Part shown: positions 29,320-63,184 of the stretch, piece by piece
Layout: each line of letters begins with the position of its first letter
How positions within the stretch are numbered: the first letter of the stretch is position 1
IMG/VR virus record: IMGVR_UViG_3300027754_000034
Coordinates: 124,001 to 188,000 of that record
DNA: 64,000 bases
Direction: 5' to 3' (one strand)
Program-made: the position numbers and the translations under genes
The notes under the pieces: model-generated
The model's input: only the letters and a program-made list of their open reading frames with translations
Told to the model about the DNA's origin: nothing
The model's database searches: none

Positions 29320-29498
29320 ACCCTTTATATTTCACCATCATCATCTTCGATTACATAATCGTGATGGGTTAGTTTTATTTTATTCTTGGTGCGTTCTAAA
29401 TCTAAAAGATATAAAGTATATTCTAATGCAGACACTTCTGTTTTTCTCTCTTCTAAGTATTTTCTAACCCTTCCCTCATCCCAGTATTTCATTTCCGG

Positions 29499-29571
29499 CA
29501 CCCCGTACGGGACTTGAACCCATTTACATGATTTGAAAGGACGCTGGCCTGACCGGGTAGTCTAACGGGGT
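29499..29571 (-). pseudogene. Degenerate tRNA-Glu(UUC)
   Basis: Acceptor ACCCCGT/ACGGGGT and T arm intact; anticodon stem GCGTC/ATCAT mostly unpaired. Confidence 0.7.
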
Positions 29572-30348: not shown

Positions 30349-31044
30349 TTACTTCATCAAATCATCGGAAATAATATTCAATTTGTTAATAATATCTGGA
30401 GATTTCTCTTGCAGCAGGGGAATTAAGATATTGCGAACCCACACCCTAAGAAATTCTTCATTATTATTAGAAGGATCTTCTGCACATGTCAGATCCCATC
30501 GTTTAGCATATCCCAGGATATCTTGCTTACTTGCCTTCAAGAGGGGTCGAAATAAGGCCAAATGAGTATCCCGCACAGGGATGTATTGGATTTCCGGAAG
30601 AACCGCTAAACTTCCAGCAGAAGTCGCTCGCATCATTCGAATGAGAACAGTTTCTGCTCTATCATCTCGATGATGGGCAGTTACCAGATTCGCCCCAATT
30701 TCATATGCCTTATTCCACAAGGCACAATAACGACCTTCTCGAGCTCGGGCTTGTAAATTGCCACCCTTCTCGATAGTGATTCTTTCTCGAATGAACGGGA
30801 TGGACTCATGTCGGCAAAGCGATTCTGCTGAATCCAGTTCAGAATCCGCCTCCGGTCGGAGTCCATGATTCACACCCATGGCCCATATACGGTGTCCCTG
30901 GGCTTTCGCGACGTGAGAAAAGCCCTTGATTAACACTTGACTATCTGAGCCGCCAGAGACGGCCAAGAGAAAGCGGAAAGGGCCATCGAAGTGCCTCTTC
31001 AGAGCAGCTTCAATTTCCTGATTGATGATGGCCCTCCCGCTCAT
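30349..31044 (-). CDS. tilS: tRNA(Ile)-lysidine synthetase (catalytic domain only)
   Basis: AVSGGSDS PP-loop, VNHGLR, AREGRY, TAHHRDDRAET, RPLL, EDPSN, R..VRN. Confidence 0.92.
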   Translation of the reverse strand: MSGRAIINQEIEAALKRHFDGPFRFLLAVSGGSDSQVLIKGFSHVAKAQGHRIWAMGVNHGLRPEADSELDSAESLCRHESIPFIRERITIEKGGNLQARAREGRYCALWNKAYEIGANLVTAHHRDDRAETVLIRMMRATSAGSLAVLPEIQYIPVRDTHLALFRPLLKASKQDILGYAKRWDLTCAEDPSNNNEEFLRVWVRNILIPLLQEKSPDIINKLNIISDDLMK

Positions 31045-32999: not shown

Positions 33000-33260
33000 T
33001 CAGAATTCCGAATCTTTGAATGAGTGACCCTTGACGCCGACCATGATCGCCCTGGTCAGCTGCGCCCCCTCCCATTCAGCCCCGGTCAGATCCGCCCTGG
33101 TCAGGTCCGCCCTGGTCAGGATCGTGTTGCTCAGGTTCGCGAAGGTCAGGTTTGTGTCAACCAGACACGCCCCGCTCAGGTTCGCGAAGGTCAGGTTTGC
33201 AAAGTGCAGGTTTGCTCCGCTCAGGTTCGCGTTGAGCATCCACGCATCGCTCAGGTTCGC
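33000..33260 (-). pseudogene. 5'-truncated pentapeptide-repeat gene fused to a promoter cassette
   Basis: ANLSD/ANLTF repeats start immediately after the motif copy, with no N-terminal domain. Confidence 0.6.
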
Positions 33261-33267
33261 AACAGGA

Positions 33268-33292
33268 AGACGCAGCGAGTGCGCCGACTGTC
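33268..33292 (-). promoter_or_regulatory. ECF-like promoter motif (duplicate of 34017 copy)
   Basis: cgcaacaggaagacgcagcgagtgcgccgactgtcgcgaatttttcgaacccaaa. Confidence 0.72.
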
Positions 33293-33363
33293 GCGAATTT
33301 TTCGAACCCAAAAACTCTGTGTCTTTCGACTGATATTGTTACCTTCTAACTATATACGGGTGG

Positions 33364-34139: not shown

Positions 34140-34493
34140 CTAGTTCAATTGCAAAACTTCAAAAGAATCGGGTCCGGTCGAATAAACAACCTTCCGGACT
34201 CCACGACGACGAAGCATACGCTCACAGTTATGGCATGGTTTAGCCATTGCCAAATCCCCATTCCTAGACGCTCTCGCCACCCAGACGATAGCGCCAACAT
34301 CAAGTTTGGAACAAAGCCGGGTTTCCGCATGAATCATCGCACACTTATCTCGTGCGGCACCATTATAACTAGAAACAAAAGCACCATCTGCCCGAAGCCC
34401 TAAGGCACCAACCCAGAAAGAACGTTCATCCTTCCTCTTGGAGCCGAGACGAGCTGCCTGCTCCAGCAGGCCCAGGTCTTCTTTTCGCGACAT
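34140..34493 (-). CDS. Zn-dependent deaminase, CDA/TadA/dCMP-deaminase superfamily
   Basis: VGA...N...HAE...KPCHNC...GVRKVVYS. Confidence 0.88.
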   Translation of the reverse strand: MSRKEDLGLLEQAARLGSKRKDERSFWVGALGLRADGAFVSSYNGAARDKCAMIHAETRLCSKLDVGAIVWVARASRNGDLAMAKPCHNCERMLRRRGVRKVVYSTGPDSFEVLQLN

Positions 34494-34494
34494 A

Positions 34495-34917
34495 TCAATA
34501 ATGTTTCACAAGTCGCGCATTCACTATTCCGAGTTCCAGTACTCCGAAGTTTGTGTCAAATCGGCAAGCGATAATGTCGCCGTGATATTCTATCATTTGT
34601 CCTTCACGAACCCTCAGCGTCTGCTCGTCATTCGAAAGACGCAAGTAAATATCCGGGACGGATACTATTGCCTCGTCCATGTCTGCAGTGATTTTCCCTG
34701 AACGGCTCACATTTACCACGTAGCTGTTCAGATGAGCTTCGTGCCCTGTGAGGGCTTCACAAGCTTTTTCGGCTTGGAATCCGGTAAGCTTACGCATTCG
34801 GAATTCTGAACGAATTTGGAAATATTCCGATGTAGTAAGTACCGAACTCGCCTTGGCTAACGGATCGATGAAAAGGATTGAAAATGCTAGAACGGCTGCT
34901 GTTGCGATCTTCTTCAT
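34495..34917 (-). CDS. Secreted OB-fold-like protein
   Basis: Signal peptide MKKIATAAVLAFSILF...AKA; L..GQ.I...G. Confidence 0.5.
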   Translation of the reverse strand: MKKIATAAVLAFSILFIDPLAKASSVLTTSEYFQIRSEFRMRKLTGFQAEKACEALTGHEAHLNSYVVNVSRSGKITADMDEAIVSVPDIYLRLSNDEQTLRVREGQMIEYHGDIIACRFDTNFGVLELGIVNARLVKHY

Positions 34918-34944
34918 AATTCCTCCAGAAGATTAGAATCTTCG

Positions 34945-35018
34945 CGCCCTCGGGTGGACTCGAACCACCGACCTGTCGCTTAGAAGGCGAATGCTCTATC
35001 CAATTGAGCTACGAGGGC
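34945..35018 (-). tRNA. tRNA-Arg(UCU)
   Basis: GCCCTCG/CGAGGGC acceptor, TCGC-CTTCTAA-GCGA. Confidence 0.92.
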
Positions 35019-35107
35019 AATTTTTGGTTTTCATTTACCGCGAACGTAAAACCAATAAAACCGTACTCCGTCCAATTAGGACGAATACCATGTTCACGAG
35101 CGGGATT

Positions 35108-35326
35108 TTAAAATCTCATCCAGTTCTCGGGTTCACCTGAAGAAATGGCTTTTTTGGCCTCTTCCTCGGTTTCGAAGTAGATAGACTCCCGAGAGTAGGG
35201 TCCACAGTAACAAGCTGTTCCGAGGTACCACCCCGCGCCGGAACGGAGCGGTTGGAGGACCAGCTTAATATTACAACTGCCGCAGGTATCAGCGGCTCCA
35301 GACAGTATAGTTTCGCCTGCAATCAT
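35108..35326 (-). CDS. Small Cys-containing phage protein (start revised to MIAGET)
   Basis: SGAGWYLGTAC.CGPYSRES.YF.T.EEA. Confidence 0.65.
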   Translation of the reverse strand: MIAGETILSGAADTCGSCNIKLVLQPLRSGAGWYLGTACYCGPYSRESIYFETEEEAKKAISSGEPENWMRF

Positions 35327-35362
35327 TTGTGTTCTTCCTGTGTGTGTGTGCGTCTCTCGGGT

Positions 35363-35387
35363 AGACGCTGCGCGCGCGCCGACTGTC
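35363..35387 (-). promoter_or_regulatory. ECF-like promoter motif in repeated cassette
   Basis: agacg-ctgcgcgcgcgccga-ctgtcaccattctcttcagaat. Confidence 0.72.
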
Positions 35388-35429
35388 ACCATTCTCTTCA
35401 GAATATTTCTCCATCAGGACATTTTTGGG

Positions 35430-35993
35430 TCATTTATTCAAAAGGTGTCGATTCAGCAAATGCTGAAAAGGGCGGATTTCAAACATGGCTTCCTGAACCA
35501 TTCTCACCCAGGTAGAAGAATGGAAAAAATTGGGTCCAGGTTTTTCCAGGAAATTCCAGAACCCCAGGAAATCGGTATTATGTCCGATTTTCCGATTCAT
35601 CCGGTCGGTCGGATCTACCCAGGGGTTTGTCACCATCCATGATGGTCTGCCTCTTCGAATTTGAAAAAGACAGGGTTCCCAGTCCAATATATGACACATA
35701 CTGGACGAAAATAATATATTATTTCGGTTTAAATCTCCATGCACTAGACCGAAATAATAAGCTAAATCCAAAGATTTGGCTAGGCTGATTTTTTGCCTAG
35801 AGGACAACTCACCATAGTTTATTTTTTCGCCGGGCGAGCGAGAAGATTCCCTTACTACATTATCCTTCAATACAGTAAATTTTACTTGAACAGGAATCCT
35901 GACCGAAATCTTTTCAATCACGGCGATTCTATCTAGAACTTGGTCCCAAGGGCAAAGAAGGTCTTCTCTTTTATAAGATTTTTGGAAGATCAA
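35430..35993 (-). CDS. Protein-kinase-like (APH/PKL) protein
   Basis: VHGDLNRNNILF...ILDWE. Confidence 0.7.
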   Translation of the reverse strand: MIFQKSYKREDLLCPWDQVLDRIAVIEKISVRIPVQVKFTVLKDNVVRESSRSPGEKINYGELSSRQKISLAKSLDLAYYFGLVHGDLNRNNILFSSSMCHILDWEPCLFQIRRGRPSWMVTNPWVDPTDRMNRKIGHNTDFLGFWNFLEKPGPNFFHSSTWVRMVQEAMFEIRPFQHLLNRHLLNK

Positions 35994-36199
35994 CCGAGCT
36001 TCCTTAGTTTATCATTCAATTCTTCAATTTTATCTCGCAAAAATTTGCGCATCGCCTGATTGGCTTTCGACTCTTCCTGGAACGTTAAGTCGTTCTTTAC
36101 GTATCCGTGTCCCACGATGTGATAACCATCGGGGTCACTACGGATTGCATCCGAACGCTTCACTTCTTCTTTTGACGAGTCGATAAACCAAAGCTTCAT
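35990..36199 (-). CDS. Hypothetical protein
   Basis: ATGA-coupled operon. Confidence 0.5.
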   Translation of the reverse strand: MKLWFIDSSKEEVKRSDAIRSDPDGYHIVGHGYVKNDLTFQEESKANQAMRKFLRDKIEELNDKLRKLG

Positions 36200-36624
36200 T
36201 TTATATGAACTTTACAAGTCCGTTTATTATGACCGAGTTCGTAACAAATCGAACATCGATTGAAGCCGATTTGGGTTCTCGGCGGACTTGAAATTCGCAT
36301 CCTAGAATTCTTCTTTTTAAAGAATTCCGGGGGTTTGGGTCTGCAAGTTTCCATTATGTCGATTTCAAGACCCAAAACGAATAAAACTTTTCGAAATACA
36401 AGTTCGCTGATTGATTCTTGTCGAAGCATTCCACGAATTCTTGCAGAAGTCACACCGACTCTGCGAGCCAAATCGCTCTTGGTCCAATTTAGATCTTTTA
36501 GCCTGAAATCAATGACCTCTGAAAAAGTAAAATTTTGATTCAAATTACTACCATTTGGGAATACGTTTCCAAATGTAATGATAGCCTTTCTCACCCGGTA
36601 AATTACAACGGCAAAGACTCCCAC
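36196..36624 (-). CDS. XRE-type HTH regulator with C-terminal zinc knuckle
   Basis: WTKSDLARRVGVTSARI; CSICYELGHNKRTC. Confidence 0.75.
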   Translation of the reverse strand: MGVFAVVIYRVRKAIITFGNVFPNGSNLNQNFTFSEVIDFRLKDLNWTKSDLARRVGVTSARIRGMLRQESISELVFRKVLFVLGLEIDIMETCRPKPPEFFKKKNSRMRISSPPRTQIGFNRCSICYELGHNKRTCKVHIK

Positions 36625-36690
36625 TGTATTTGATACAATATATCAGCATGCCGTGTCAAATATGTGCTATATATTTGACACGGCATTCGG

Positions 36691-36775
36691 CGGAAGAAGA
36701 GGGATTCGAACCCACGGTGGGTTTCCCCACGGCTGATTAGTAATCAGCTGCCTTAAACCACTCGGCCATTCTTCC
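36691..36775 (-). tRNA. tRNA-Ser with rare ACU anticodon
   Basis: GGAAGAA acceptor, GCTGA-TTACTAA-TCAGC, long variable arm GTGGG-GAAA-CCCAC, G73. Confidence 0.9.
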
Positions 36776-36780
36776 TAGTA

Positions 36781-37221
36781 TCAGCCGTAATTTCGGACGA
36801 TGTGGAAGTTCCACCATTTGAGAGGTCGGAACCTTCGCAAACGGTCGGAAAGATCCATGATCGTCCGAAGCGGGACATTATGAATGTTCCGATCGGAGCA
36901 CAGATCCACATCAGCGTCGATTCGGATGATGCGGGAATCACATCCAAACGCGTTGGCGAGCGCCATGTAAGGCGCGCATTCAAGCTCAGTGGTGTTTGTA
37001 TTATCAATGATCACCTCTGGGGCACCAGAGGTTACAGCTTCTACTGCTCTCTTGAAGCAGTTCCCATGAGCCCATGATAGCTGCGTTTTATCGAATTTGT
37101 AAACCCCATTCACTTCAAAGAAGTGTTCGGAGCTACAAATTACGGCGTTCTGAAAGTGGGCTTTCGTGTAATGGGTTTTACCTGAGCCAGGAAGACCCTG
37201 CATAATGTATAATTTAGTCAT
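36781..37221 (-). CDS. P-loop kinase, polynucleotide-kinase/AAA_33-like
   Basis: MQGLPGSGKT, IIDNTN, RNIHNVP. Confidence 0.85.
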   Translation of the reverse strand: MTKLYIMQGLPGSGKTHYTKAHFQNAVICSSEHFFEVNGVYKFDKTQLSWAHGNCFKRAVEAVTSGAPEVIIDNTNTTELECAPYMALANAFGCDSRIIRIDADVDLCSDRNIHNVPLRTIMDLSDRLRRFRPLKWWNFHIVRNYG

Positions 37222-43986: not shown

Positions 43987-44005
43987 TAATGACCTATAGT
44001 CCGTA

Positions 44006-44896
<891 letters not shown>

Positions 44897-45131
44897 TTAC
44901 ATATGTTTTTTTATAAACAATTCACTTCAGATCATTATTTATTAGTTTATTAGTATGTAGGCACATACTTAACTTATGCTTTATGAAATCATTCTAAGGT
45001 AAGTTCGATCAATGAAACATAAATCATATGCAAGATTCTAGTCCGACTAGTTCTTAGTAAACCCCGGAACTCCTTTTACATATTTATTCTAGATTAATCA
45101 TAATAGAAAAGTCCCGAGTATTTATAATAAA

Positions 45132-45344
45132 TTAGGGAGAATTAGGGATATTGATTCCCATTTGTTTCAAAGCGTCCACCAATACTCTTAAGTTTTCTTC
45201 TACTGAGTTATTCTTAATATCTGGAATGCCTATGCTTTCTAATCCAGCCCTCTTCTTCACTTCTGCACTGGCTACATTAACAATATCTAGAAGTTCATCA
45301 TCGGGTATAATAGACATATTAGCTTTTAAAGATTCTAGGATCAT
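45132..45344 (-). CDS. Hypothetical protein
   Basis: Leaderless-type -10 box upstream. Confidence 0.5.
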   Translation of the reverse strand: MILESLKANMSIIPDDELLDIVNVASAEVKKRAGLESIGIPDIKNNSVEENLRVLVDALKQMGINIPNSP

Positions 45345-45357
45345 ATTTTATTGTACA

Positions 45358-46452
45358 TTAAGAAATGGTTATTGTTATCAAATTGGACTCAACCGGATTG
45401 TAATTAGAATTACCATTAAATTCGCATTTCAAGGATTGATTCATATCCCAGGATAATGAAGAATTATATTTCACCATTATAATTTCTGGATTCTGATTTA
45501 CCAGTCTTGTTTCTAACTTCCTTCTAGTCATTCCCTGTAATGATGTTACCTCGACCGTATAAGGAATTTCTAAATCATGTATTAAATTGATGGTAATCCA
45601 TTCATTGGTTGAAATTGTGGTCTTATTTGGCGAGATAGTGATATTCTGGTTTCCCTTGGAGACGTTAACGTTAAAATATTTTTTTGATTTTAAAAATGTG
45701 AATAAATCATCATCACCTGGATAGAAAGATACTGAATAATCCTGACTTCCAGCATCTTTTGGAATGTATGTTAAAGAAGCACTGTTATTTATCAAAGCTA
45801 TTCTAGGTCCATCATTCAATCTAACTTCTCCTTTTACGCTTATCGGTATTTCATTAAACAATGATACAGCTGTCACATTAATTACGTATGGAGACTGAAC
45901 TTCCGGAATCATCATCGGTGTAATCTGAAATTCTACAGATAATTTAGGGGATGAATCGAAAACATATTGACCATATATAGGAAATTCATGATCGTATAAT
46001 GTAATATTATTCCAAATCCAGGAATTTTTCAAATCAACCTTTTTAAATTCCTCTGCGGCATTTATTTCGTTTAAACTAGCGATTTCTTTGAACGCGTAGG
46101 CTGGGATGCTGTCTGTTACTAGTAAAACTGAGTATTGATTTTCTGCGATTCTGTCTACTCTAGATACATGTACTTTGGATATTATTTCATCTTGTAATTG
46201 ATATCCCTCTAAATACCAGTTAGTAACGAGTCCATTTTTAAATAATTTTATTGCGTTTTGTTCGGCAGTCTTGGAGTCTAGAGCAGATATGAGTATGCTA
46301 GCTCTAGCAAAGTATTTTTTACTAAATACAGTCAATACATAATTATTCATAACAAAATATCCGATAAAAATTCCGACTTGGATATTTTTATGTAATATTT
46401 TGATGTAATATTTTGTGTGGAAAGACACACTACACTTGATCAAAATTACCAT
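45358..46452 (-). CDS. Protein with C-terminal Ig-like domains (probable start MNNYVL)
   Basis: V.FYPGDD and F.GNSNYNP.ES Big_3-like endings. Confidence 0.55.
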   Translation of the reverse strand: MVILIKCSVSFHTKYYIKILHKNIQVGIFIGYFVMNNYVLTVFSKKYFARASILISALDSKTAEQNAIKLFKNGLVTNWYLEGYQLQDEIISKVHVSRVDRIAENQYSVLLVTDSIPAYAFKEIASLNEINAAEEFKKVDLKNSWIWNNITLYDHEFPIYGQYVFDSSPKLSVEFQITPMMIPEVQSPYVINVTAVSLFNEIPISVKGEVRLNDGPRIALINNSASLTYIPKDAGSQDYSVSFYPGDDDLFTFLKSKKYFNVNVSKGNQNITISPNKTTISTNEWITINLIHDLEIPYTVEVTSLQGMTRRKLETRLVNQNPEIIMVKYNSSLSWDMNQSLKCEFNGNSNYNPVESNLITITIS

Positions 46453-47106
46453 AAATACGCTCCATCAGAATGTCTAAACCCCAAAGAATGGTTCGAAAAG
46501 GCATTCCAGTTCGGTCATGAATATTATGGTTCAGAAATAACTAGAGCTAGTGCAGTAGATTTTAAAAAGGTTTCCCCCAGTTTATTCTTCTCAGAATATA
46601 TCTGGGTAGTTCATGCGACAGGCTTTTCAGCAAAAGCAGTTAGTAAATTTATCGAACGTCTGTCGAAAGCATATGGGGAGTATGATACACTAAGCCAAAA
46701 ATCCATAGAAGAGGCACTAATGATAGTAACTCCTGTCGTGAATAACCCTCCTAAAATTAGAGCCATATGGGAGACATCAAAATTACTTAATCATGGCATT
46801 ATACTTATGGGTTGGGAGGAGTTCAAAAATACTAAATTAAACGACCTAGAAAAACTGCAATCACTTCCATATATAGGAAAAGTAACTAAATATCATTTAG
46901 GCAGAAATATTGGAATGTTAGATTGTGTAAAACCAGATTTACACTTAGTGAGATTGAGGAAAAAATTCGGGTACGAATCTGAAATAGAAATGATAAGAGA
47001 TATGTCTATGGGTCACGAATTACCACTAGGAATCGCTGATATGATTGCTTGGTACTATGCTTCTACCTTTGGAACCAGCCATATGAAAAATAAAGGAGAC
47101 CGATAA
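46417..47106 (+). CDS. HhH-GPD DNA-glycosylase-fold protein
   Basis: LQSLPYIGKVT HhH; KPDLHLVRL. Confidence 0.75.
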   Translation: MERHTTLDQNYHKYAPSECLNPKEWFEKAFQFGHEYYGSEITRASAVDFKKVSPSLFFSEYIWVVHATGFSAKAVSKFIERLSKAYGEYDTLSQKSIEEALMIVTPVVNNPPKIRAIWETSKLLNHGIILMGWEEFKNTKLNDLEKLQSLPYIGKVTKYHLGRNIGMLDCVKPDLHLVRLRKKFGYESEIEMIRDMSMGHELPLGIADMIAWYYASTFGTSHMKNKGDR

Positions 47107-47915
47107 TGAATTATATTTTTGGAATATCTGGATTCGCAGGTATTGGTAAAGATGAATTTTGTAGAAGACTTGTGTCGAATTACGGGGCAACGCATATTGG
47201 ACTCATAGATCCAGGTAAAAGAACATTGCACGAAATATATGGATTCTCGGAAAAACAGTTATTTGGTCCTTCGAAGTATAGGAATTACGGTGACTTGAGA
47301 TATCCTAAAGCGCCATTTTTTGAGGAGAAACTCATTAGAACGAACATCAAGAATGAAACAGGCAAACACTTTTGGGTTAAATCTCTAAATTCCCATATCG
47401 ACAGTCAAGACTGTATTTCAGAAGGAGACCCAAAGTACTGGCTATCTCCTAGAGAAGCATTACAACAAGTGGGGGAACTTTTAAATAATTTATATCAAAA
47501 TACTTGGATAGATTTAGGATTGAAGACCCATCAAGTATTAGCTGAGGGAGGATATAAATATTCTAGAATGGAAGGGTTAAAAAAAGATAATTCAATACCA
47601 AAACCGAAGACATTCATTTCCTGTTTTTCAGATTTTAGACATCATAATGAAATTCATGCTACTAGAAAATTAGAATCTGCGGATTTGAAGACTATTTTAA
47701 TAAGAATTAAATCCTGTAAAATTCCGCAACCACAACATGATCATAAATCTGAGATAGAACAAACGACTATTCCAGATTCACATTTCGATTTTATCATTCA
47801 AAATGACGGTACTCTAATGTTATACCATGAAATGATAGATAAAATATTATATGAAGTATTTAATACTAATCATCTGGAATCTCCTGAATCATCAATGATC
47901 AATGGAAGTACTTAG
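47106..47915 (+). CDS. Deoxynucleoside monophosphate kinase (T4 gp1-like)
   Basis: GISGFAGIGKD, PREALQQVG, SDFR..NE, HKSE, IQNDGT. Confidence 0.88.
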   Translation: MNYIFGISGFAGIGKDEFCRRLVSNYGATHIGLIDPGKRTLHEIYGFSEKQLFGPSKYRNYGDLRYPKAPFFEEKLIRTNIKNETGKHFWVKSLNSHIDSQDCISEGDPKYWLSPREALQQVGELLNNLYQNTWIDLGLKTHQVLAEGGYKYSRMEGLKKDNSIPKPKTFISCFSDFRHHNEIHATRKLESADLKTILIRIKSCKIPQPQHDHKSEIEQTTIPDSHFDFIIQNDGTLMLYHEMIDKILYEVFNTNHLESPESSMINGST

Positions 47916-48741
47916 TGATTATCCATTGCAAAAAGGCTATAGCAGCTGCCATGGTTCCCACAGGAATAGTAATTTTTCGAGTCAATCCTTTTCCGGATTG
48001 ATCAGCCTGATCAATAATCTGCGTTAAAGCTTCAGTTGTGGTTTTCTTAACATGACCTTCAAAGGTCGCCATTCGCGAATCATGTATCACATCGGATGTC
48101 ATTAGTTTCATTATTTCCTTCGTATGTATATTAAACTGGTTTATTACTTGATTTTTTAGTTCTTCTAAAGCATCTTTATTTTGTATAGCTGCGGCCTCCG
48201 CCTTTTTTGAGGCTGCAACCGCTTGATTTAAATCTTCTCTTGTCTTTATGATTTCTTCTTTAAGAGTATCATTGATGTCTAAAATCTCCTTTTTTATAGA
48301 TTTTAACTCCATGAGTGCAGCTGAAGTCTGAAACGTATTGTCTGCTGACATCTTTGCGAACTTAAATCCTATGTCCGCCTTTTCTGTTAAAACCATTAAT
48401 TCCACGTGGAAAATTAAATATTCATCATCTTTATATTCTATGCTCATCATCCACCATGCTATTTTATGTTTAGCGCATGAAATAGGCCACAACGTTTTTA
48501 GTGGGACACTGTGTGGGGAATAGCCAGTAAGTAATCTTGATAATCTACCCCTAAAGGTTTCGTCCACCAAGCCGAATATACTAGTATTAAGAATAGAGTT
48601 TAATTCCCCATTGCACTTTTCTGTTAAGGAGGTATTCACCCAAGTAACAGTTCCTGAAAGACATTCTAACTCAAAGTATGATTTTTCAGAGTATGCCTTG
48701 TCTTCTTTAAATAATTCTCTAGATGCATTTGACTCTTGCAT
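47899..48741 (-). CDS. PAS-like domain, coiled coil and C-terminal transmembrane helix
   Basis: G.V.WVN.......G......LN.SI..LV pattern; hydrophobic C-terminus. Confidence 0.4.
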   Translation of the reverse strand: MQESNASRELFKEDKAYSEKSYFELECLSGTVTWVNTSLTEKCNGELNSILNTSIFGLVDETFRGRLSRLLTGYSPHSVPLKTLWPISCAKHKIAWWMMSIEYKDDEYLIFHVELMVLTEKADIGFKFAKMSADNTFQTSAALMELKSIKKEILDINDTLKEEIIKTREDLNQAVAASKKAEAAAIQNKDALEELKNQVINQFNIHTKEIMKLMTSDVIHDSRMATFEGHVKKTTTEALTQIIDQADQSGKGLTRKITIPVGTMAAAIAFLQWIITKYFH

Positions 48742-48782
48742 TATTCTGTAAAGTATATTAACGATTAAACACTGAAAGAATC

Positions 48783-49115
48783 ATGATTTTAGAAATGAGA
48801 TGTGAAAAATGCAGAGTATCTGATTATTGTCCTTCGAAGGGTTCGTCTCCTGGCGTCCTTAAAAATGGAAAGCATGCGTTATGTAGATTAGTAGGGGGAT
48901 ATGGACGAAAAACTCTTCCTGAAAAAATCCTTTCTAAGGAATCGAAAGAATTGTCAGCAAACGGTAGGAATTGTCTAACAATAGCTGAAATTCCCATTAT
49001 TTTAGGAAATGATGTATTTTACAAAATAGAAAAGATATTCTCGCCCCCAGTTTTACATGAGAGAGAATCTCTCTCATGGCATCAGAAAATGTTAATGCCT
49101 AAAAGAAAATCATAA
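48783..49115 (+). CDS. Cys-rich hypothetical protein
   Basis: CEKC...CP...C. Confidence 0.5.
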   Translation: MILEMRCEKCRVSDYCPSKGSSPGVLKNGKHALCRLVGGYGRKTLPEKILSKESKELSANGRNCLTIAEIPIILGNDVFYKIEKIFSPPVLHERESLSWHQKMLMPKRKS

Positions 49116-50423
49116 ATGATCACCTATTTCGTCTGGGGAGATCGCGTTGCACCACTGCATTAATTCAGGAAATTTATTATTTACTTCTTCAAACATTTTA
49201 AATGCTATTCTTCTATATGAAATATGACCTTGAGGCTTAGTTCTCAATTCAGTGATATAATATAACTCCGCTAGGTCCATCTTAAATATACTACGATGTA
49301 AATAACCCATGGGAATGATGTACTGGTATATGTCATTGTCATGAATTACTGTGTCTTCTTCGTAATTCAATAACTGATCCATAACGTTCCTATATTTTTC
49401 CTCCAGGGGTGTGTTAACAAAGTCATCCGGCACTGAGTACCCATAGTATGTAGTTAAAGGTTCAGGAAATTGTTCACACCTTCGATGTCTTTGTAAGTCT
49501 CTATATGCCCCATAATCCATTATTATCTCTAATGTGAAATCTACTAATCTAAATATTTCAACAGTTCTTCTATTTCCTCTTTTATTCATCAGTGTATTCA
49601 ATTCCCCCCATTCCATACCATATATGCTCTTTGCATATTTCTTCATTTTCTCGAAGGACTTAAGGTCGCAATTTAGTATCTTTACTGATTCTTTATCTTT
49701 TACAAAATAATCTGGTATGATCGCCTTCAACCTTGGTTCAAAATTATCTGGTTCAATTCCCCCCAATAATGAAGGACATAATTCCGAAGCACATTTTAAA
49801 ACCTCTGCACCTATGGTTCGTATCTCCGGATTTTTATGCCCTAAAGCCTCCGATATCAAATATCTTAAATCCCTAAGATTTATTACGCAAGCCAAGTTGG
49901 TTCCTGTTCCAGCTGGTAATAAGTATCTAAGACTATCAAAAGCCCTGGCTTTTACTCTATTTTCATTAATGTCTTGAGTTCCAATGAGGCATGCTGCTCT
50001 ATCTAGAGCAGCATGATGCATTTCATCATACGCTTCATAATATCTTTTAGCAAAGTTCGTAAGTGTTGTATTACCAGGTAAGGGATTAATAAAACTATCC
50101 TTACTAAAATATTGATATCTGGTACTTTTCTCTGAATAGCCTGCTCTTTGATATTTTTCTATGAATTTAGATGCAATTATACTAATTCCTTCAAAGCAAA
50201 TAGGGATTACAGCTAGCTCTGCAACACTAGAATGACCATAACTTATAGTCCATTTAGAATGGAATTTATTCGCTTCTTCGTTAGTTAACGTGTTTATTAT
50301 ATCCTTTGCAGATAAGGACGACCTAGAATACTTAGCAAGAGTAGTGGCTTGAATGGAAGGAGGTAATAAATTTCCATCCTTAGATTTAAGAACATATATA
50401 TCCATAAAGAATCCTACATTCAT
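49110..50423 (-). CDS. thyX: FAD-dependent thymidylate synthase, tandem-domain type
   Basis: YGHSSVAE, SEKSTRY, RYLLP, RDLQRHR, ELRT..QGH..YR. Confidence 0.9.
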   Translation of the reverse strand: MNVGFFMDIYVLKSKDGNLLPPSIQATTLAKYSRSSLSAKDIINTLTNEEANKFHSKWTISYGHSSVAELAVIPICFEGISIIASKFIEKYQRAGYSEKSTRYQYFSKDSFINPLPGNTTLTNFAKRYYEAYDEMHHAALDRAACLIGTQDINENRVKARAFDSLRYLLPAGTGTNLACVINLRDLRYLISEALGHKNPEIRTIGAEVLKCASELCPSLLGGIEPDNFEPRLKAIIPDYFVKDKESVKILNCDLKSFEKMKKYAKSIYGMEWGELNTLMNKRGNRRTVEIFRLVDFTLEIIMDYGAYRDLQRHRRCEQFPEPLTTYYGYSVPDDFVNTPLEEKYRNVMDQLLNYEEDTVIHDNDIYQYIIPMGYLHRSIFKMDLAELYYITELRTKPQGHISYRRIAFKMFEEVNNKFPELMQWCNAISPDEIGDHL

Positions 50424-50455
50424 ATAATGATTCTAACAATGGAATTGGTAAGGTA

Positions 50456-51025
50456 ATGCTGGAGATTACAAAAATGTTAAATGCGGAACTAATAGAGAGA
50501 ATATCTAAAACGAAAATAAATGTGAACCCTGAAGTTTATTCACATGAAATTCAAAAAGCTTTTCTACCATGGGATGTAGATTTATCTCCCTCTGCCTTAT
50601 ACGGGTGTAGTGTTGGATGCAGGAAGTCCATGGGAATTAAAACCCCAGAAGTAAAATGGATAAGTGTTAAAAGATGGGTGAATATAACACCAATGGGTGT
50701 TACCCTCCCACCAGGGTGTTATTTATCAATTAAAAGAAAAGAAACATTTGAAGCCACTCCGACACCCAAATTCATAAAACAAGATTTCGTTTTAGTATTA
50801 TTTCCACATGGGAATGTGTGGTCACAAAAAGAAGAAGATGATCCAATTACGGAAGAATGGTTATGGTCAGAAGAAAACGGAAAAACCATCTTCGAAATGC
50901 TCATAAATAAGGATTATGACAGACCGATATCTGGATATTTTTCTTCCTGCTATGGATATATGAAGAAAAATCCTGAACAAATCGGAATACACCTAAAGAG
51001 AAAGAAAAATCTCACTAAGGTGTGA
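50456..51025 (+). CDS. Hypothetical protein
   Basis: ORF track. Confidence 0.55.
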   Translation: MLEITKMLNAELIERISKTKINVNPEVYSHEIQKAFLPWDVDLSPSALYGCSVGCRKSMGIKTPEVKWISVKRWVNITPMGVTLPPGCYLSIKRKETFEATPTPKFIKQDFVLVLFPHGNVWSQKEEDDPITEEWLWSEENGKTIFEMLINKDYDRPISGYFSSCYGYMKKNPEQIGIHLKRKKNLTKV

Positions 51026-51027
51026 AA

Positions 51028-51237
51028 TCATTCAAGTCGTATGAAAGGAAGTCCCACTAAATTTCTCCTTATGGACTCTCTTTCTTCTGATGAATTCGTT
51101 TTTATTATTAAATGACTGTCGGACCAATGAATACTTAGGGCTTCATATGGTAACTCGGTGGTTCCGATCCATAATCTTATTCCATTCTGATTTATCGCTA
51201 TAGTTACTGAGTCCATCGAAAATACCTTAGGCTTCAT
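51028..51237 (-). CDS. Hypothetical protein
   Basis: ORF track. Confidence 0.4.
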   Translation of the reverse strand: MKPKVFSMDSVTIAINQNGIRLWIGTTELPYEALSIHWSDSHLIIKTNSSEERESIRRNLVGLPFIRLE

Positions 51238-51261
51238 AAAGACATTTTGAGTATAAAAGAA

Positions 51262-52296
51262 TTACTTTTTATATAACCTATTCACATTATTCAAGGCCCA
51301 TTCTTCCAATTCTGATTTTCCTAGTCTTTTTGCCGACCACCTAATTATATCATAGGGTCCTTCATGTAAGGCTGCTGGATGTCGAAAACCTATTCTATAT
51401 ACCGATGTTCCAAGTCCACTATCTAGTCCCATATTAATCGCTTGTCTCGACCAGATTATTGCTTTATCAAACATGTTGAGATGATAACTACAAAATCCTG
51501 CCAACCAATACAACTCCGCGATGCCAGGATGTCTACCTATCCCTCTCGCACATGATTCCAAAGCTTTCTGATATTCATTTTTCTTAATAAAGCAACCAGC
51601 CATTTTGAACATACTCCAAGCAGATTCTTCATCCCAGCCGTTCAAATTATGGCAAGATTCATAAGCTAGTATGGCGTCATCTAATTTATTTAAATTATTG
51701 TAAGTGTCTCCTAAATAATAAAACCACCTCGGATCTTTCGCATTTTCCTTTGTATGCTTTTCTAAAATTTCGGCATCTCTCTTTAGTTTGTGCTGCATCT
51801 GTTCAGCAGTCTTACGTAACTCACTAAAATTAGCATTAGGGGCATTGTGGCACCCCACAGAATGTGCAGGGTAAACCTCATGGGTAGGACCATAAAAAGC
51901 ACTGGATATAGGCAACCGAAAACATCGTGCTTTATAATATGTCTTCCCAACATCCATTATGGATATGCAGTTTTCTTTTGTAAGAGACATTAGTTTTCTT
52001 AAGTCATCGTTATTCTGGTGAATTCTTTCGTCCGTATCTAGAATTATCGCCCAATCACCACCGTGGTTATGCGCCGACAATAGTGTGAAATTCCGAGCAG
52101 CTGCAAAGTCATTGATCCATGGGAAAGATTCTATTATGAGTCTTTCTCCACATACATCTTTAGCTACTTCTAAAGTTTGGTCTGTAATGCCTGTATCAAC
52201 CACCAAGAATTTATCGACTATATCATATACGCTTTTTAAGGCATCTGATATTATACTCTGATTATTTCCAGATAGAGTTACACTTATGACCTTCAT
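51262..52296 (-). CDS. GT2 glycosyltransferase with TPR repeats
   Basis: VVDTG.TD.T, W.NDFAAARN, LDTDE, HE, DPRW.YYLG. Confidence 0.9.
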   Translation of the reverse strand: MKVISVTLSGNNQSIISDALKSVYDIVDKFLVVDTGITDQTLEVAKDVCGERLIIESFPWINDFAAARNFTLLSAHNHGGDWAIILDTDERIHQNNDDLRKLMSLTKENCISIMDVGKTYYKARCFRLPISSAFYGPTHEVYPAHSVGCHNAPNANFSELRKTAEQMQHKLKRDAEILEKHTKENAKDPRWFYYLGDTYNNLNKLDDAILAYESCHNLNGWDEESAWSMFKMAGCFIKKNEYQKALESCARGIGRHPGIAELYWLAGFCSYHLNMFDKAIIWSRQAINMGLDSGLGTSVYRIGFRHPAALHEGPYDIIRWSAKRLGKSELEEWALNNVNRLYKK

Positions 52297-52349
52297 AACT
52301 AAGTTATTTTACTAATTGAGTTGTCGCATCATTACTTTATTTATGGTAT

Positions 52350-52766
52350 GTGAAAATCATGGGAATTTTTAGCAAGTTAAAACATAAAATAGCCGTAACC
52401 AAAAGCAATAGAAGAGAAAAAAGAAAAGAAAAACTCCGTTCCCCTAAGTGGTCTTCTACCAGGGATTCATTTTTAAAAAGTCACAATACTTGCTCTGTGT
52501 GTATGGGAACCAGTAATCTACAAGTACACCACATAAAACCATTCCATAAATATCCCGAACTAGAATTAGACTCTGAAAATCTTATTACATTATGTATGGG
52601 CGACAAGGATTGCCACTTAGGAATAGGTCATGGAGGATCCTTTGATTTTTATAATCCAAAGGTTCGAGAAGATGTAAAACTGCTTACGGAAAAATTGTCT
52701 TTATTTGATAAATTGAAAACAGAAATAAAGCAAAGAAGATTTTCTAATACTAATAAATCCCTCTAA
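52350..52766 (+). CDS. HNH endonuclease
   Basis: CSVC...LQVHHIKP...NLITLC....CH...H. Confidence 0.88.
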   Translation: MKIMGIFSKLKHKIAVTKSNRREKRKEKLRSPKWSSTRDSFLKSHNTCSVCMGTSNLQVHHIKPFHKYPELELDSENLITLCMGDKDCHLGIGHGGSFDFYNPKVREDVKLLTEKLSLFDKLKTEIKQRRFSNTNKSL

Positions 52767-53047
52767 TCTCCAATAACGATATCCAAAGACAATAAATTTA
52801 GAGAATATGTGAGTTGCATTTGCGCCACTACGTGGAGGCCATTACTTGGTGTTTCCATGACCTCCCGTATTGATTTTATGTCTTCAGATTCTTGAGCCAG
52901 CTCACATTTATCTAAACTATAACTCTCAATTAATCCTTGCTTACATAATGATTCTAAAAGAATATTAATTTTAACCCGATGAGTTTCTAACGATTTATCT
53001 GTAATTATATAATTAGATATCGTATCACGAATCATTTGCTCTATCAT
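52763..53047 (-). CDS. Hypothetical protein
   Basis: Leaderless-type box; internal tag-like IREVMET. Confidence 0.45.
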   Translation of the reverse strand: MIEQMIRDTISNYIITDKSLETHRVKINILLESLCKQGLIESYSLDKCELAQESEDIKSIREVMETPSNGLHVVAQMQLTYSLNLLSLDIVIGD

Positions 53048-53135
53048 AAATGAAGTTACACAAAGAATTTCATTTACACCGGATTTGAATTTGTCATATA
53101 CCCTAGTAGTTCCCCGAGCATATGTTCAGGTGAAA

Positions 53136-53185
53136 CGACGCCGTGATCGATCGAGTGTATTCGGGCTCGAACGATCACGGCGTCG
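53136..53185. other. GC-rich hairpin in AT-rich intergenic DNA
   Basis: cgacgccgtgatcg...cgatcacggcgtcg perfect 14-bp arms plus inner tcgag/ctcga. Confidence 0.7.
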
Positions 53186-53280
53186 AACGTGAATCCCATT
53201 CTTTTAACATTGGCTTTAAACCTTGATTAAGGCTGCGGAGTCTCACCACGGTTTTTATCTTTTAATGTATACTTCATAGT

Positions 53281-54174
53281 ATGAACCCCGTAAATGCATC
53301 TAATATGATGAAGAGAATGGCTGCCGCGTTAGCGGCATCCAAGTCTCCCAATAAATCTGCCGTAGCAAAAGATCTTATGGCATTATCTGACGCCATAAAC
53401 GGAAATAGAAAAGCTGAGGCTTATTTAACAAATAAATTGGCGGGAGGAAGGACTCACAAAGGAAACATACCACCCCTCCCCATGCAAGGGGAGCGTTTGG
53501 ATTTTTCTGGTATGATCCCTTTAGATAAGGATTTTCATGGGAAGGACCTGTCCGTACTGAACTTCATCGATGAGGATTTACGCAGGGCGCAATTACAAAA
53601 CGCGAAACTTAACGGGAGGGACCTGTCCGGGGCGGACCTGTCCGGGGCGGACCTGACCGGGGCGGACCTGAGCGGTGCGAAACTTAACGAGGCAACCATG
53701 AAAGGGGCGAACCTCACCGGGGCGGACCTGACCGGGGCGGTCCTGACCAACGTAAACCTGTCCGTGGCGAAACTGACCGAGGCGAACCTGTCCGGGGCGA
53801 ACCTGTCCGGGGCGAACCTGTCCGGGGCGAACCTCACCGGGGCGAACCTGTCCGGGGCGAATCTGGACGAGGCATTTCTGATTGATAAGCGGCACCCCGC
53901 ACCCACAGTAAGAGCTGAAGGACACCCAGAAATAGAATTGTTCATCCAAGAAAATCTCAGCAGAAATTATGGAGTTCATACTCTCAATGACTGGTCTGAT
54001 CTCTTGACTGATGCGGTATATGAGGCGTCCGGTGCCTACCATGGTAGTAATTTGAAAGAGCGTGTAAAAGAGGAGCTGATAAAGGAACTATTAGCGGGCA
54101 ATTTTATGAGAGGCATTATAGACTTCAGTGATATTCTGAAAAGACTTCAAATTTCGGATGTAATGATGGCATAA
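53281..54174 (+). CDS. Mosaic pentapeptide-repeat protein (N-module of 24897, C-domain and tag of 16875)
   Basis: KRMAAAL..SK.P N-terminus; ends DFSDILKRLQISDVMMA*. Confidence 0.88.
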   Translation: MNPVNASNMMKRMAAALAASKSPNKSAVAKDLMALSDAINGNRKAEAYLTNKLAGGRTHKGNIPPLPMQGERLDFSGMIPLDKDFHGKDLSVLNFIDEDLRRAQLQNAKLNGRDLSGADLSGADLTGADLSGAKLNEATMKGANLTGADLTGAVLTNVNLSVAKLTEANLSGANLSGANLSGANLTGANLSGANLDEAFLIDKRHPAPTVRAEGHPEIELFIQENLSRNYGVHTLNDWSDLLTDAVYEASGAYHGSNLKERVKEELIKELLAGNFMRGIIDFSDILKRLQISDVMMA

Positions 54175-54248
54175 TAGTAAAAATGCAACTGAACCATAAT
54201 GATCACCAAACAGAAAACACGTGGATTATTATGGCACCTCACTTGTTG

Positions 54249-54824
54249 TCACTTATTTGATGACCACACCACACGCCGACGACCTTTATCCTTAATATAG
54301 GCTCGAACTATGGATGATATTGGAATGTTTCCAGGATATCTTGCTGTCAAAGCCCCCAATCCCCCTTGCCCATCATCGATCAACAAAGGGTCAGGGGTAA
54401 TCTTCATGGAGTTAATAACCTGAATGATTACATCATTAGGTTCACCCCCGTTTTCGATGAGCTTCATGATCTCGGCCCCAGCTTCTGGATATTCATCCAT
54501 GAACTCGTCAGATGGCGGGTCTCCAAGACTATAACAGTTCACGGAGTCCTCATCCATCAAGAGAGGTCCAGGTGGAACCACCTCGATGATTACAACCTCA
54601 TCGTCTGATAGTTTTAGAATTTCCTGATAATTGTTGGCCCCTTTCATATTATTTATGAGATAAACCCCTTCTCCCGTCTTATATCCTCCCCATTTAACAT
54701 TATTAGAAGTCTTTTTCAGTCCGCTCTTAAGAATAGATTTCAACAACTTCCGATTCGTAACATGAAACCATTTATTACCGCCAGCAGCCACCCGATAGGC
54801 AACAGTGTAGAGATTCATAGACAT
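54249..54824 (-). CDS. ADP-ribosyltransferase-fold (Tpt1/DarT-like) protein with 'RVAA' leader
   Basis: WFHVT....LKSILKSGLK...GVYL...IP.S.I. Confidence 0.65.
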   Translation of the reverse strand: MSMNLYTVAYRVAAGGNKWFHVTNRKLLKSILKSGLKKTSNNVKWGGYKTGEGVYLINNMKGANNYQEILKLSDDEVVIIEVVPPGPLLMDEDSVNCYSLGDPPSDEFMDEYPEAGAEIMKLIENGGEPNDVIIQVINSMKITPDPLLIDDGQGGLGALTARYPGNIPISSIVRAYIKDKGRRRVVWSSNK

Positions 54825-57710: not shown

Positions 57711-57739
57711 TGCAACCTCCGTGTTTAGAGACTATACAT

Positions 57740-60851: not shown

Positions 60852-60879
60852 ATTTTTCATGATTACCTAATGTAGGATC

Positions 60880-63183: not shown

Positions 63184-63184
63184 A

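What the first reader, a model, noticed from the sequence alone, without database searches (positions are those of the whole stretch)
34140..36775. tRNA-Ser(ACU) near a TadA/CDA-like deaminase: phage-run wobble editing?
Seen: a well-formed class II tRNA-Ser with anticodon ACT, and 2.2 kb downstream on the same strand a HAE...PCxxC deaminase. Established: A34 tRNAs are very rare in bacteria apart from Arg(ACG), and I34 on ACU would also misread AGA(Arg); the phage carries tRNA-Arg(UCU) in between. Inference: either an unmodified A34 tRNA evading an anticodon nuclease, or a substrate for the phage deaminase, paralleling the tilS/tRNA(CAU) pair.
Basis: partly seen in the sequence, partly recalled or inferred. 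Interest (0 to 1): 0.62.

Follow-up and report, generated by a model that had tools for sequence, protein, structure and literature searches.

The report
Phage tRNA-Ser(ACU), unlinked small deaminase
The odd serine tRNA with an A-starting anticodon is real and belongs to a widespread, conserved tRNA type carried by many phages and some AT-rich bacteria, and nothing links it to the small deaminase gene 2.2 kb away, which more likely serves nucleotide metabolism.

Summary
A class II tRNA-Ser with anticodon ACU lies at 36689-36775 (-), with A34 at base 36741. A 117-aa HAE...PCxxC deaminase lies at 34140-34493 (-), and tRNA-Arg(UCU) sits between them.

The window is part of a 257-kb IMG/VR jumbo-phage record.

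A34 is not an assembly error. All 10 metagenome contigs sharing this anticodon arm have A34. More than 119 viral contigs carry a tRNA-Ser(ACU). In a sample unbiased at position 34, 13 of 71 viral AGY-type tRNA-Ser genes are ACU. The 127 unique ACU sequences covary in every helix. Bacterial genomes also carry it, often beside Ser(GCU), and a cultured Rhizobium phage has it annotated.

ACU-bearing contigs are more AT-rich and more AGU-biased, as this phage is. The best reading is an AGU-specialised decoder with A34 kept as A.

The deaminase belongs to a large viral family of about 115-aa minimal deaminases without TadA's C-terminal helices. That family and tRNA-Ser(ACU) do not co-occur in either direction. 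The phage encodes ThyX, so a dCMP or dC deaminase role is more likely. Wobble editing is not supported.

The parts
36689..36775 (-). tRNA-Ser, anticodon ACU (A34 is + strand base 36741). Class II, with a long variable arm, G73, C11-G24 and a U50-U64 mismatch.
   Evidence: ARAGORN; Rfam 56.2 bits; cloverleaf as the minimum-energy fold; member of a covarying family of 127 unique ACU tRNAs.
36650..36684 (-). Perfect 14-bp hairpin with a 7-nt loop, starting 5 nt after the tRNA's 3' end. It may be a processing or termination signal, but no T run follows.
   Evidence: Read from the sequence. The terminator scan did not call it. Its function is inferred.
36781..37221 (-). P-loop kinase (AAA_33, polynucleotide-kinase-like). 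Its stop codon lies 6 nt upstream of the tRNA-Ser, so the two are probably co-transcribed.
   Evidence: Pfam PF13671 at 1.2e-15; PHROG 2071 at 4.9e-24 and PHROG 505 polynucleotide kinase at 9.6e-10; weak NCBIfam PNK and PSTK hits far below cut-off.
36196..36624 (-). Small helix-turn-helix protein (142 aa).
   Evidence: Weak Pfam HTH_37 and HTH_3 hits and PHROG transcriptional-regulator hits.
34944..35018 (-). tRNA-Arg(UCU), which reads AGA.
   Evidence: ARAGORN; Rfam 68.8 bits. It is kept in the same place in the 85%-identical relative L014 and in L012.
34495..34917 (-). 140-aa protein with a signal-peptide-like N-terminus and no family match. Its stop abuts the deaminase start.
   Evidence: ORF list and sequence; no Pfam or PHROG hit; synteny kept in L012 and L014.
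34140..34493 (-). 117-aa zinc deaminase of the cytidine-deaminase fold (H55-A-E57, P86-C87-x-x-C90). It belongs to a large, mostly viral family of about 115-aa proteins. Substrate unproven; a dCMP or deoxycytidine deaminase is the most likely.
   Evidence: PF00383; PHROG 174 dCMP deaminase at 3e-8; 2242 relatives; AF2 model with pLDDT 94; fold searches; Atlas cluster 92% viral; the only PF00383 gene in the record.
49110..50423 (-). ThyX-type thymidylate synthase (two Thy1 domains), the likely consumer of dUMP made by a dCMP deaminase.
   Evidence: the genome search on the own record with PF02511: 71.4 and 49.7 bits, both above cut-off. No ThyA was found.

Best explanation
The tRNA is a working serine tRNA of a recurrent type in which position 34 is A instead of the usual G. 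SerRS should charge it through its long variable arm, G73 and acceptor and D-stem elements, none of which involve the anticodon. With A34 left as adenosine it pairs by Watson-Crick with AGU, the AGY codon this AT-rich phage uses twice as often as AGC. It thus supplements a host tRNA-Ser(GCU) that reads AGU only by G-U wobble. It sits with the phage's other tRNAs (Arg UCU, Leu UAA, Gly UCC, Asn GUU, Ser GGA), which match the phage's favoured A/U-rich codons. The 117-aa deaminase is an independent gene. It is a minimal cytidine-deaminase-fold enzyme of a large viral family and most likely deaminates a pyrimidine nucleotide or nucleoside (dCMP or dC) to feed the phage ThyX. Shown here: the tRNA's existence, its conservation and covariation, its distribution, the AT and AGU association, the lack of co-occurrence with the deaminase family, and the deaminase fold. 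Inferred: that the tRNA is expressed, that A34 stays unmodified, that it decodes AGU, and the deaminase's substrate.
For: A34 is conserved. All 10 metagenome contigs with the same anticodon arm have A at position 34. At least 119 IMG/VR contigs match an ACU-specific pattern, and 77 of 80 fetched loci hold an ARAGORN tRNA-Ser(act). With position 34 left free, 13 ACU and 58 GCU genes were found in viral contigs. In Patescibacteria the ratio is 4 to 135 (Fisher p = 2e-4). In GTDB genome contigs, 53 of 80 fetched loci hold tRNA-Ser(act), often adjacent to Ser(gct), Ser(tga) or Ser(gga). The 127 unique ACU tRNAs keep every helix through compensatory changes. With position 34 masked, the nearest relative of an ACU tRNA is another ACU tRNA in 131 of 134 cases. 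Adjacent ACU and GCU genes in one genome are only 52-72% identical. Viral ACU loci have lower GC than GCU loci (37.6% against 40.8%, p = 7e-4) and a higher AGT share of AGY codons (0.67 against 0.53, p = 9e-4). This phage has 1282 AGT and 656 AGC codons. Published work reports that unmodified A34 pairs best with U (PMC11066159 abstract) and that an engineered Ser-tRNA(ACU) is tolerated and even beneficial in E. coli (bioRxiv 10.64898/2026.05.15.725136). On the deaminase: PHROG 174 dCMP deaminase; ThyX present, and this is the only PF00383 gene in the record; the fold lacks TadA's C-terminal elements; there is no co-occurrence with ACU tRNAs.
Confidence: 0.6

Rival explanations
1. Phage-run wobble editing. 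The 117-aa deaminase converts A34 of tRNA-Ser(ACU) to inosine, which widens its reading to AGU and AGC, and also to AGA.
For: The two genes share a strand and lie 2.2 kb apart. By sequence, the family profile's best solved relative is TadA. MafB19-deam hits occur in 19 of 87 members. Some family members sit close to tRNA genes.
Against: There is no co-occurrence. Ten large ACU-bearing phage genomes lack the family, and no member lies within about 2 Mb of tRNA-Ser flanks. LR745208.1 carries the family but has Ser(GCU) and not ACU. Two carriers have no tRNA at all. The model ends in a beta-hairpin and lacks TadA's helix 4 and C-terminal tRNA-binding helix. An ICU anticodon would put Ser at AGA, the phage's most used Arg codon. 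Bacteria keep ACU next to GCU, which would be pointless if ACU were edited into a broader reader.
Confidence: 0.04
2. The host TadA edits A34 of the phage tRNA, partly or fully, because the loop is one base away from its motif.
For: UUACUAA differs from YUACGAA at position 36 only. 26% of natural TadA mRNA sites deviate from the motif by one base (PMC12255301). An engineered two-codon-box A34 tRNA became I34 in E. coli (bioRxiv 10.64898/2026.05.15.725136).
Against: The four-base core UACG is described as required, and single-base mutations of the motif abolish or nearly abolish editing. Editing would cause AGA misreading. The long-term conservation of ACU beside GCU in bacterial chromosomes argues that ACU has a distinct and harmless decoding role.
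Confidence: 0.12
3. Defence evasion. A34 lets the phage tRNA escape a host anticodon nuclease that cuts tRNA-Ser(GCU), so AGY decoding continues during infection.
For: A polynucleotide-kinase-like P-loop kinase sits immediately upstream of the tRNA. ACU is enriched in viral contigs relative to bacteria.
Against: No Rnl2-type RNA ligase (PF09414) or CCA-adding enzyme was found in the record, although it is only about 60% complete. I know of no nuclease specific for tRNA-Ser(GCU). ACU also occurs in bacterial chromosomes beside GCU. The association with AT content and AGU usage fits codon matching.
Confidence: 0.1
4. A hitchhiker or decaying copy. This particular gene is a neutral passenger or a pseudogene with a G34A change and a T-stem mismatch.
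For: It has a U50-U64 mismatch, and there is no expression evidence.
Against: Its nearest relatives are all ACU tRNAs. A34 is invariant in 10 of 10 contigs sharing the arm. Four of the 127 unique family sequences, this one among them, carry the same U-U pair while keeping every other helix. It scores 56 bits against a cut-off of 29 and folds as a cloverleaf.
Confidence: 0.1

Closest known systems
tRNA-Ser(act) annotated in Rhizobium phages RHph_TM30, TM40 and Y65 (MN988521.1, 128636-128725)
   Same: A class II tRNA-Ser with anticodon ACU in a jumbo-size phage of about 207 kb. It is 80% identical to the window's tRNA over 68 nt.
   Different: It comes from a different phage family and host, and no deaminase link was examined. 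The record only annotates it; I found no functional study.
tRNA-Ser(ACU), reading AGU, of chloroviruses (ATCV-1 and the SAG clade)
   Same: A virus-encoded tRNA-Ser for AGU, listed within tRNA clusters thought to offset host codon bias (PMC4810235; PMC7589089).
   Different: These are viruses of eukaryotic algae, whose hosts have ADAT. Homology to the phage tRNA was not tested here.
Engineered Ser-tRNA(ACU) in E. coli (bioRxiv 10.64898/2026.05.15.725136)
   Same: The same anticodon in a bacterial translation system. It was reported as functional, with a low predicted risk of mistranslation, and as growth-improving when overexpressed.
   Different: It is a synthetic G34A change in an E. coli backbone. 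That paper treats natural two-codon-box A34 tRNAs as rare in GtRNAdb genomes.
TadA / ADAT2 tRNA adenosine deaminases
   Same: The HAE and PCxxC zinc site, and the best sequence-profile match among solved structures (S. aureus TadA 2b3j, E = 7e-7).
   Different: TadA is 150-170 aa with helix 4, a parallel beta5 and a C-terminal helix that holds the anticodon loop. The 117-aa protein ends in a beta4-beta5 hairpin. It gave no NCBIfam hit. Its family does not track A34 tRNAs.
Phage dCMP deaminases (T4 Cd 1vq2; cyanophage S-TIM5 4p9c)
   Different: These enzymes are longer (138-193 aa) and carry the helix-4 topology. Similarity is weak (E = 1e-2 to 1e-4). dCMP binding was not tested.
Homotetrameric cytidine deaminases and blasticidin-S deaminase
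   Different: Those enzymes use Cys-Cys-Cys zinc ligands, whereas this family has His-Cys-Cys. Sequence identity is only 13-23%.

Membership tests
tRNA-Ser (bacterial class II) | Cloverleaf that scores above the tRNA covariance-model threshold | tested here: met
   Rfam RF00005 at 56.2 bits against a cut-off of 29; ARAGORN call; cloverleaf as the minimum-energy fold.
tRNA-Ser (bacterial class II) | Long variable arm, G73 discriminator and C11-G24. These SerRS identity elements, recalled from the E. coli literature, are independent of the anticodon. | tested here: met
   A 5-bp variable-arm helix, G73 and a GCC/GGC D stem are read from the sequence. The same features are kept in 127 family members.
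tRNA-Ser (bacterial class II) | Transcribed, processed and charged with serine | not testable with these tools
Recurrent phage and bacterial tRNA-Ser(ACU) group | Loop YUACUAA with A34, and nearest relatives that are other ACU tRNAs | tested here: met
   The top 25 BLAST hits among 218 Ser(ACU) and Ser(GCU) tRNAs are all ACU. The stem has G30-C40 as in 98% of the group. A31-U39 is the minority state, seen in about 18%.
TadA/ADAT tRNA adenosine deaminase | H(C)AE and PCxxC zinc-binding catalytic motifs | tested here: met
   H55, E57 and C90 are invariant and C87 is at least 90% conserved across 87 family members. The motifs are shared by the whole superfamily, so this is not diagnostic.
TadA/ADAT tRNA adenosine deaminase | Helix 4, a parallel beta5 and a C-terminal helix that form the anticodon-loop binding surface | tested here: not met
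   The AF2 model (pLDDT 94) has beta4 at 101-107 and beta5 at 110-115 joined by a two-residue turn, and the protein ends at residue 117. The best full-length superpositions are with cytidine and blasticidin deaminases.
TadA/ADAT tRNA adenosine deaminase | Matches curated TadA models | tested here: not met
   No NCBIfam family at E <= 0.01. Pfam gives only the generic PF00383.
TadA/ADAT tRNA adenosine deaminase | Co-occurs with an A34 tRNA substrate | tested here: not met
   Searches show ACU tRNAs without the family. Searches show the family without ACU tRNAs, and in two records without any tRNA.
dCMP deaminase (ComEB / T4 Cd type) | Similarity to dCMP deaminase models | tested here: inconclusive
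   PHROG 174 at 3.1e-8; PDB 2hvv at 1.7e-3 and 4p9c at 1.2e-2. With the family profile, TadA scores slightly higher.
dCMP deaminase (ComEB / T4 Cd type) | A thymidylate synthase partner in the genome | tested here: met
   ThyX at window 49110-50423. This is the only PF00383 deaminase in the record.
dCMP deaminase (ComEB / T4 Cd type) | dCMP phosphate binding and deamination activity | not testable with these tools
   This needs an enzyme assay or a ligand-bound structure.
Homotetrameric cytidine deaminase / blasticidin-S deaminase | Small core of about 120-135 aa with a C-terminal beta-hairpin | tested here: met
Homotetrameric cytidine deaminase / blasticidin-S deaminase | Three-cysteine zinc site (CxE ... 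PCxxC) | tested here: not met
   The family has an invariant His55 at the first ligand.

The most novel reading that the evidence does not exclude
tRNA-Ser(ACU) is not a scatter of G34A accidents. It is a distinct, old and mobile isoacceptor lineage with its own backbone signature, such as G30-C40 in 98% of members. It works with a true A34 in a split codon box. Phages carry it several times more often than bacteria do, as an AGU-dedicated decoder, which breaks the textbook rule that ANN anticodons outside Arg(ACG) are avoided. The more exotic reading, that the small viral deaminase family edits this or another RNA, is not excluded for this phage, but I put it at or below 5%.
Probability: 0.5. 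Interest if true: 0.6.

Novelty: new member of a known kind. Interest (0 to 1): 0.42.

Why it matters
The avoidance of A at the wobble position is a long-standing puzzle in decoding. A natural, conserved and abundant A34 tRNA in a two-codon box gives a ready test system. Its members include tRNAs of cultured Rhizobium phages and of Polynucleobacter isolates. With them one can ask whether A34 stays unmodified in vivo, how it discriminates AGU and AGC from AGA and AGG, and why TadA leaves it alone. For phage biology, it adds a specific example to the codon-matching view of phage tRNAs. For annotation, it warns against treating gene proximity as a tRNA-enzyme pairing. It also flags a family of more than 2000 minimal viral deaminases whose substrate is still unknown.

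Tried and rejected
- **Raw reads.** No read-level check or expression test was therefore possible, and read laying was not called.
- **Other assemblies of the same phage.** The same phage, or a near-identical one, was assembled in other samples (JGI 3300010885 and a Logan run). The DNA around the tRNA was not retrievable: 'sample's file too large' or contigs too short.
- **Close relatives.** The exact anticodon arm was not found in viral contigs. The kinase gave no relatives there. The 85% relative L014 stops short of the tRNA-Ser. BLAST of 5 kb against cultured phages found only tRNA and pentapeptide-repeat matches.
- **Searches that failed to run.** The search for related loci with the 87-sequence alignment failed for lack of a conserved stretch. 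With the 4-sequence alignment it gave two loci. Whole-record tRNA searches of the Logan and ENA contigs L013, L356 and L358 were not possible because those records are not held.
- **Gene neighbourhood of the deaminase family.** Four family members were examined: P0004, P0154, P0013 and P0018. They showed no recurrent partner. The neighbours seen were NAD-salvage-like genes, an Asp/Asn-tRNA synthetase, amidoligases and many small hypothetical genes.
- **Structure searches.** They did not discriminate between substrates.
- **tRNA repair module.** No Rnl2-type RNA ligase (PF09414) or CCA-adding enzyme was found in the record.
- **Literature.** Searches for phage or bacterial Ser(ACU) found only chlorovirus tables and the 2026 preprint on ANN tRNAs.
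Full report
**Setting.** The window is bases 124001-188000 of a single 257,205-bp contig with 39.8% GC. IMG/VR holds it as a linear virus record that CheckV rates about 60% complete. It is the JGI contig Ga0209596_1000003. It encodes a phage-type DNA polymerase, a DnaB-like helicase, a Mom-like protein and other phage genes. It carries seven tRNA genes, six of them in the window. No close relative exists among cultured phages.

- ARAGORN calls tRNA-Ser(act) at 36689-36775 (-), and Rfam scores it at 56.2 bits.
- The loop is UUACUAA, and plus-strand base 36741 is T, which is A34 of the tRNA.
- The tRNA has a 5-bp variable-arm helix, G73, a C11-G24 pair and one U50-U64 mismatch. On its own it folds into a cloverleaf.
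- tRNA-Arg(UCU) lies at 34944-35018 (-).
- A 117-aa ORF at 34140-34493 (-) carries HAE and PCHNC motifs and matches PF00383.
- The tRNA starts 6 nt after the stop codon of a polynucleotide-kinase-like P-loop kinase (36781-37221). A perfect 14-bp hairpin follows it at 36650-36684.

I did not try to reach reads another way.
- As a substitute, I searched the 21-nt anticodon arm in metagenome contigs with position 34 left free. Ten contigs matched: the window's own and nine other tRNA clusters. All have A at position 34.
ARAGORN found tRNA-Ser(act) in 77 of the 80 loci fetched.
- With position 34 as N, a sample unbiased at that base gave 58 Ser(GCU), 13 Ser(ACU) and 4 Arg(CCU). So about 18% of such viral AGY-type tRNA-Ser genes are ACU.
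- A cultured example is already annotated in GenBank: Rhizobium phage RHph_TM30, tRNA-Ser(act), 80% identical to ours.
- Chlorovirus papers also list a tRNA-Ser for AGU.

**Not confined to viruses.**
Of 80 loci fetched, 53 hold tRNA-Ser(act). It often sits directly beside Ser(gct), Ser(tga) or Ser(gga) on large chromosomal contigs.
- The carriers are mostly Patescibacteria. Others include Polynucleobacter isolates, uncultured Pseudomonadales, planctomycetes and verrucomicrobia.
- Within groups it is sporadic: 4 of 201 Patescibacteria genomes and 3 of 61 Polynucleobacter genomes.
- In the same 201 Patescibacteria, the GCU version of the pattern occurs in 134 genomes. The ACU:GCU ratio is therefore about 3% there against 18% in viral contigs (Fisher p = 2e-4).

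**A family under selection.**
- The 127 unique ACU tRNAs align to one cloverleaf. Nearly every pair is kept in at least 97% of sequences, through many compensatory changes in all five helices, including the variable arm.
- With position 34 masked, the nearest relative of an ACU tRNA is another ACU tRNA in 131 of 134 cases.
- ACU and GCU genes that lie side by side in one genome are only 52-72% identical.
- G30-C40 is present in 98% of ACU tRNAs against 57% of GCU tRNAs.
- This points to a distinct lineage and not to repeated fresh G34A mutations. Both sets were drawn with sequence patterns, so a proper tree is still needed.

**What it probably does.**
- Viral loci with ACU have lower GC than loci with GCU (median 37.6% against 40.8%) and use AGT for a larger share of AGY codons (0.67 against 0.53). 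Both differences have p below 1e-3.
- This phage has 1282 AGT against 656 AGC codons. Its other tRNAs (Arg UCU, Leu UAA, Gly UCC, Asn GUU, Ser GGA) match its most used codons: AGA, TTA, GGA, AAT and TCT.
- Unmodified A34 is reported to pair best with U (PMC11066159). An engineered Ser-tRNA(ACU) was tolerated and even beneficial in E. coli.
- I therefore read the tRNA as an AGU-specialised supplement to the host's Ser(GCU).
- Inosine is unlikely as the intended state. ICU would also read AGA, and AGA makes up 41% of the combined AGY+AGA codons in this phage.
- Host TadA requires YUACGAA in a stem-loop, and single-base changes abolish or nearly abolish editing. Even so, a quarter of natural sites deviate from the motif by one base, and our loop deviates at G36 only (PMC12255301). 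Partial host editing remains a live rival.

**The deaminase.**
- A word search found only three relatives, at 85%, 60% and 49% identity. The exhaustive profile search found 2242 relatives (372 at E <= 1e-10), and most of the 150 listed are 105-135 aa long.
- The matching ESM Atlas cluster has 1575 members and is 92% viral.
- D36, N44, H55, E57 and C90 are invariant. R34, G37, K63, R74, P86 and C87 are nearly so.
- Pfam sees only the generic PF00383, NCBIfam sees nothing, and PHROGs points weakly to dCMP deaminase.
- The family profile matches S. aureus TadA best among solved structures (32 bits), followed by other TadAs, a cyanophage dCMP deaminase (25.6 bits) and guanine deaminases. These margins are too small to assign a substrate.
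- The AlphaFold model (pLDDT 94) is a bare core. After the PCxxC helix come beta4 (101-107) and beta5 (110-115), joined by a two-residue turn, and the chain ends there. TadA and classical dCMP deaminases have a helix between these strands plus further C-terminal helices.
- The phage has ThyX (window 49110-50423) and no ThyA, and this is its only PF00383 gene. A dUMP-supplying role is the economical guess, held with moderate confidence.

**Test of the proposed pairing.** If the deaminase served tRNA-Ser(ACU), the two should travel together. They do not.
- From the tRNA side: across 718 kb around 80 viral ACU tRNAs, the family profile gave three weak hits of 27-39 bits. True members score 90-190 bits.
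- A further 1.28 Mb of viral, metagenomic and bacterial tRNA-Ser loci gave one weak hit.
- Ten large ACU-bearing viral genomes, eight of them rated complete, hold either an ordinary dCMP deaminase (frames of 135-197 aa, 33-46 bits) or nothing. None holds a family member.
- From the enzyme side: the 485-kb phage LR745208.1 has a family member and 35 tRNAs, with Ser(GCU) and not ACU.
- Two IMG/VR records with members at 40-43% identity have no tRNA at all.
- Other members sit near Ile(UAU), near Pro(UGG) or near no tRNA.

**Other readings.** Escape from an anticodon nuclease has no positive support. The neighbouring kinase is PNK-like, but no Rnl2-type RNA ligase (PF09414) or CCA-adding enzyme was found in the incomplete record. 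ACU tRNAs also live in bacterial chromosomes beside GCU. A decaying copy is unlikely given the score, the fold and the family context.

**Verdict.** The feature is real, but it is a member of a recurrent and little-discussed tRNA type. It is not a singular oddity, and the proposed tRNA-deaminase partnership is not supported. The wider pattern is the more interesting outcome: a conserved A34 tRNA in a split codon box, enriched in phages. It deserves a proper census and a modification assay.

Noticed in passing
window 29497-29571 (-) and 30349-31044 (-): A marginal tRNA-like gene that ARAGORN calls 'SeC (tca)'. Rfam scores it at only 30.5 bits, its anticodon arm pairs poorly, and its folding z-score is -0.55. 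It lies about 800 nt from a 231-aa TilS-like PP-loop protein (PF01171, 140 bits). The pair may be an unusual tRNA with its modification enzyme, or the tRNA call may be false.
   Followed up: partly
L409:292-378 (Caulobacter phage CcrBL9, MH588546.1 81826-81912) and nine related Caulobacter phages: An 87-nt tRNA with anticodon CUU, annotated as Lys, is 83% identical to the window's tRNA-Ser over 66 nt and has the length of a class II tRNA. A Ser-type body with a Lys anticodon would insert Ser at AAG if SerRS charged it.
   Followed up: no
L404 (Pseudomonas phage PhiPA3, HQ630627.1 294661-294937): The GenBank record labels two tRNAs 'tRNA-Thr, codon recognized ACU' and 'tRNA-Cys, codon recognized UGU'. 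ARAGORN reads them as Ser(UGA) and Thr(UGU). The record looks like an anticodon, codon or strand mix-up.
   Followed up: partly
Genome loci L236-L315; G238 (a Polynucleobacter genome) contigs C13, C25, C28 and C37: tRNA-Ser(ACU) sits next to Ser(GCU) and other Ser tRNAs on chromosomal contigs of many Patescibacteria and other MAGs. One Polynucleobacter genome has four near-identical copies on different contigs, which suggests carriage on a mobile element.
   Followed up: partly
LR745208.1 (485-kb uncultured phage), 153495-153567 and 422757-423098: This huge phage encodes 35 tRNAs, including Arg(ACG), the canonical TadA substrate. It also carries a member of the small deaminase family about 270 kb away from that tRNA.
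   Followed up: partly
window 1-44000 against 44001-64000: GC content shifts from about 42-53% to about 35-40% near 44 kb. The tRNA and accessory-gene region is richer in GC than the genome mean of 39.8%.
   Followed up: no
window 33000-33311 (-): A 103-aa pentapeptide-repeat protein (PF00805, 71.7 bits) shares about 70-73% nucleotide identity with pentapeptide-repeat genes of Ralstonia podophages.
   Followed up: no
G000:C1:1-460 (outside the window): The first 100 bases of the contig recur at offset 153, and the first 20 recur again at offset 306. This indicates a tandem repeat with a period of about 153 bp at the left end of the contig.
   Followed up: no
window 44006-44896 (-): A 296-aa protein with collagen triple-helix repeats (PF01391, 76 bits).
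   Followed up: no
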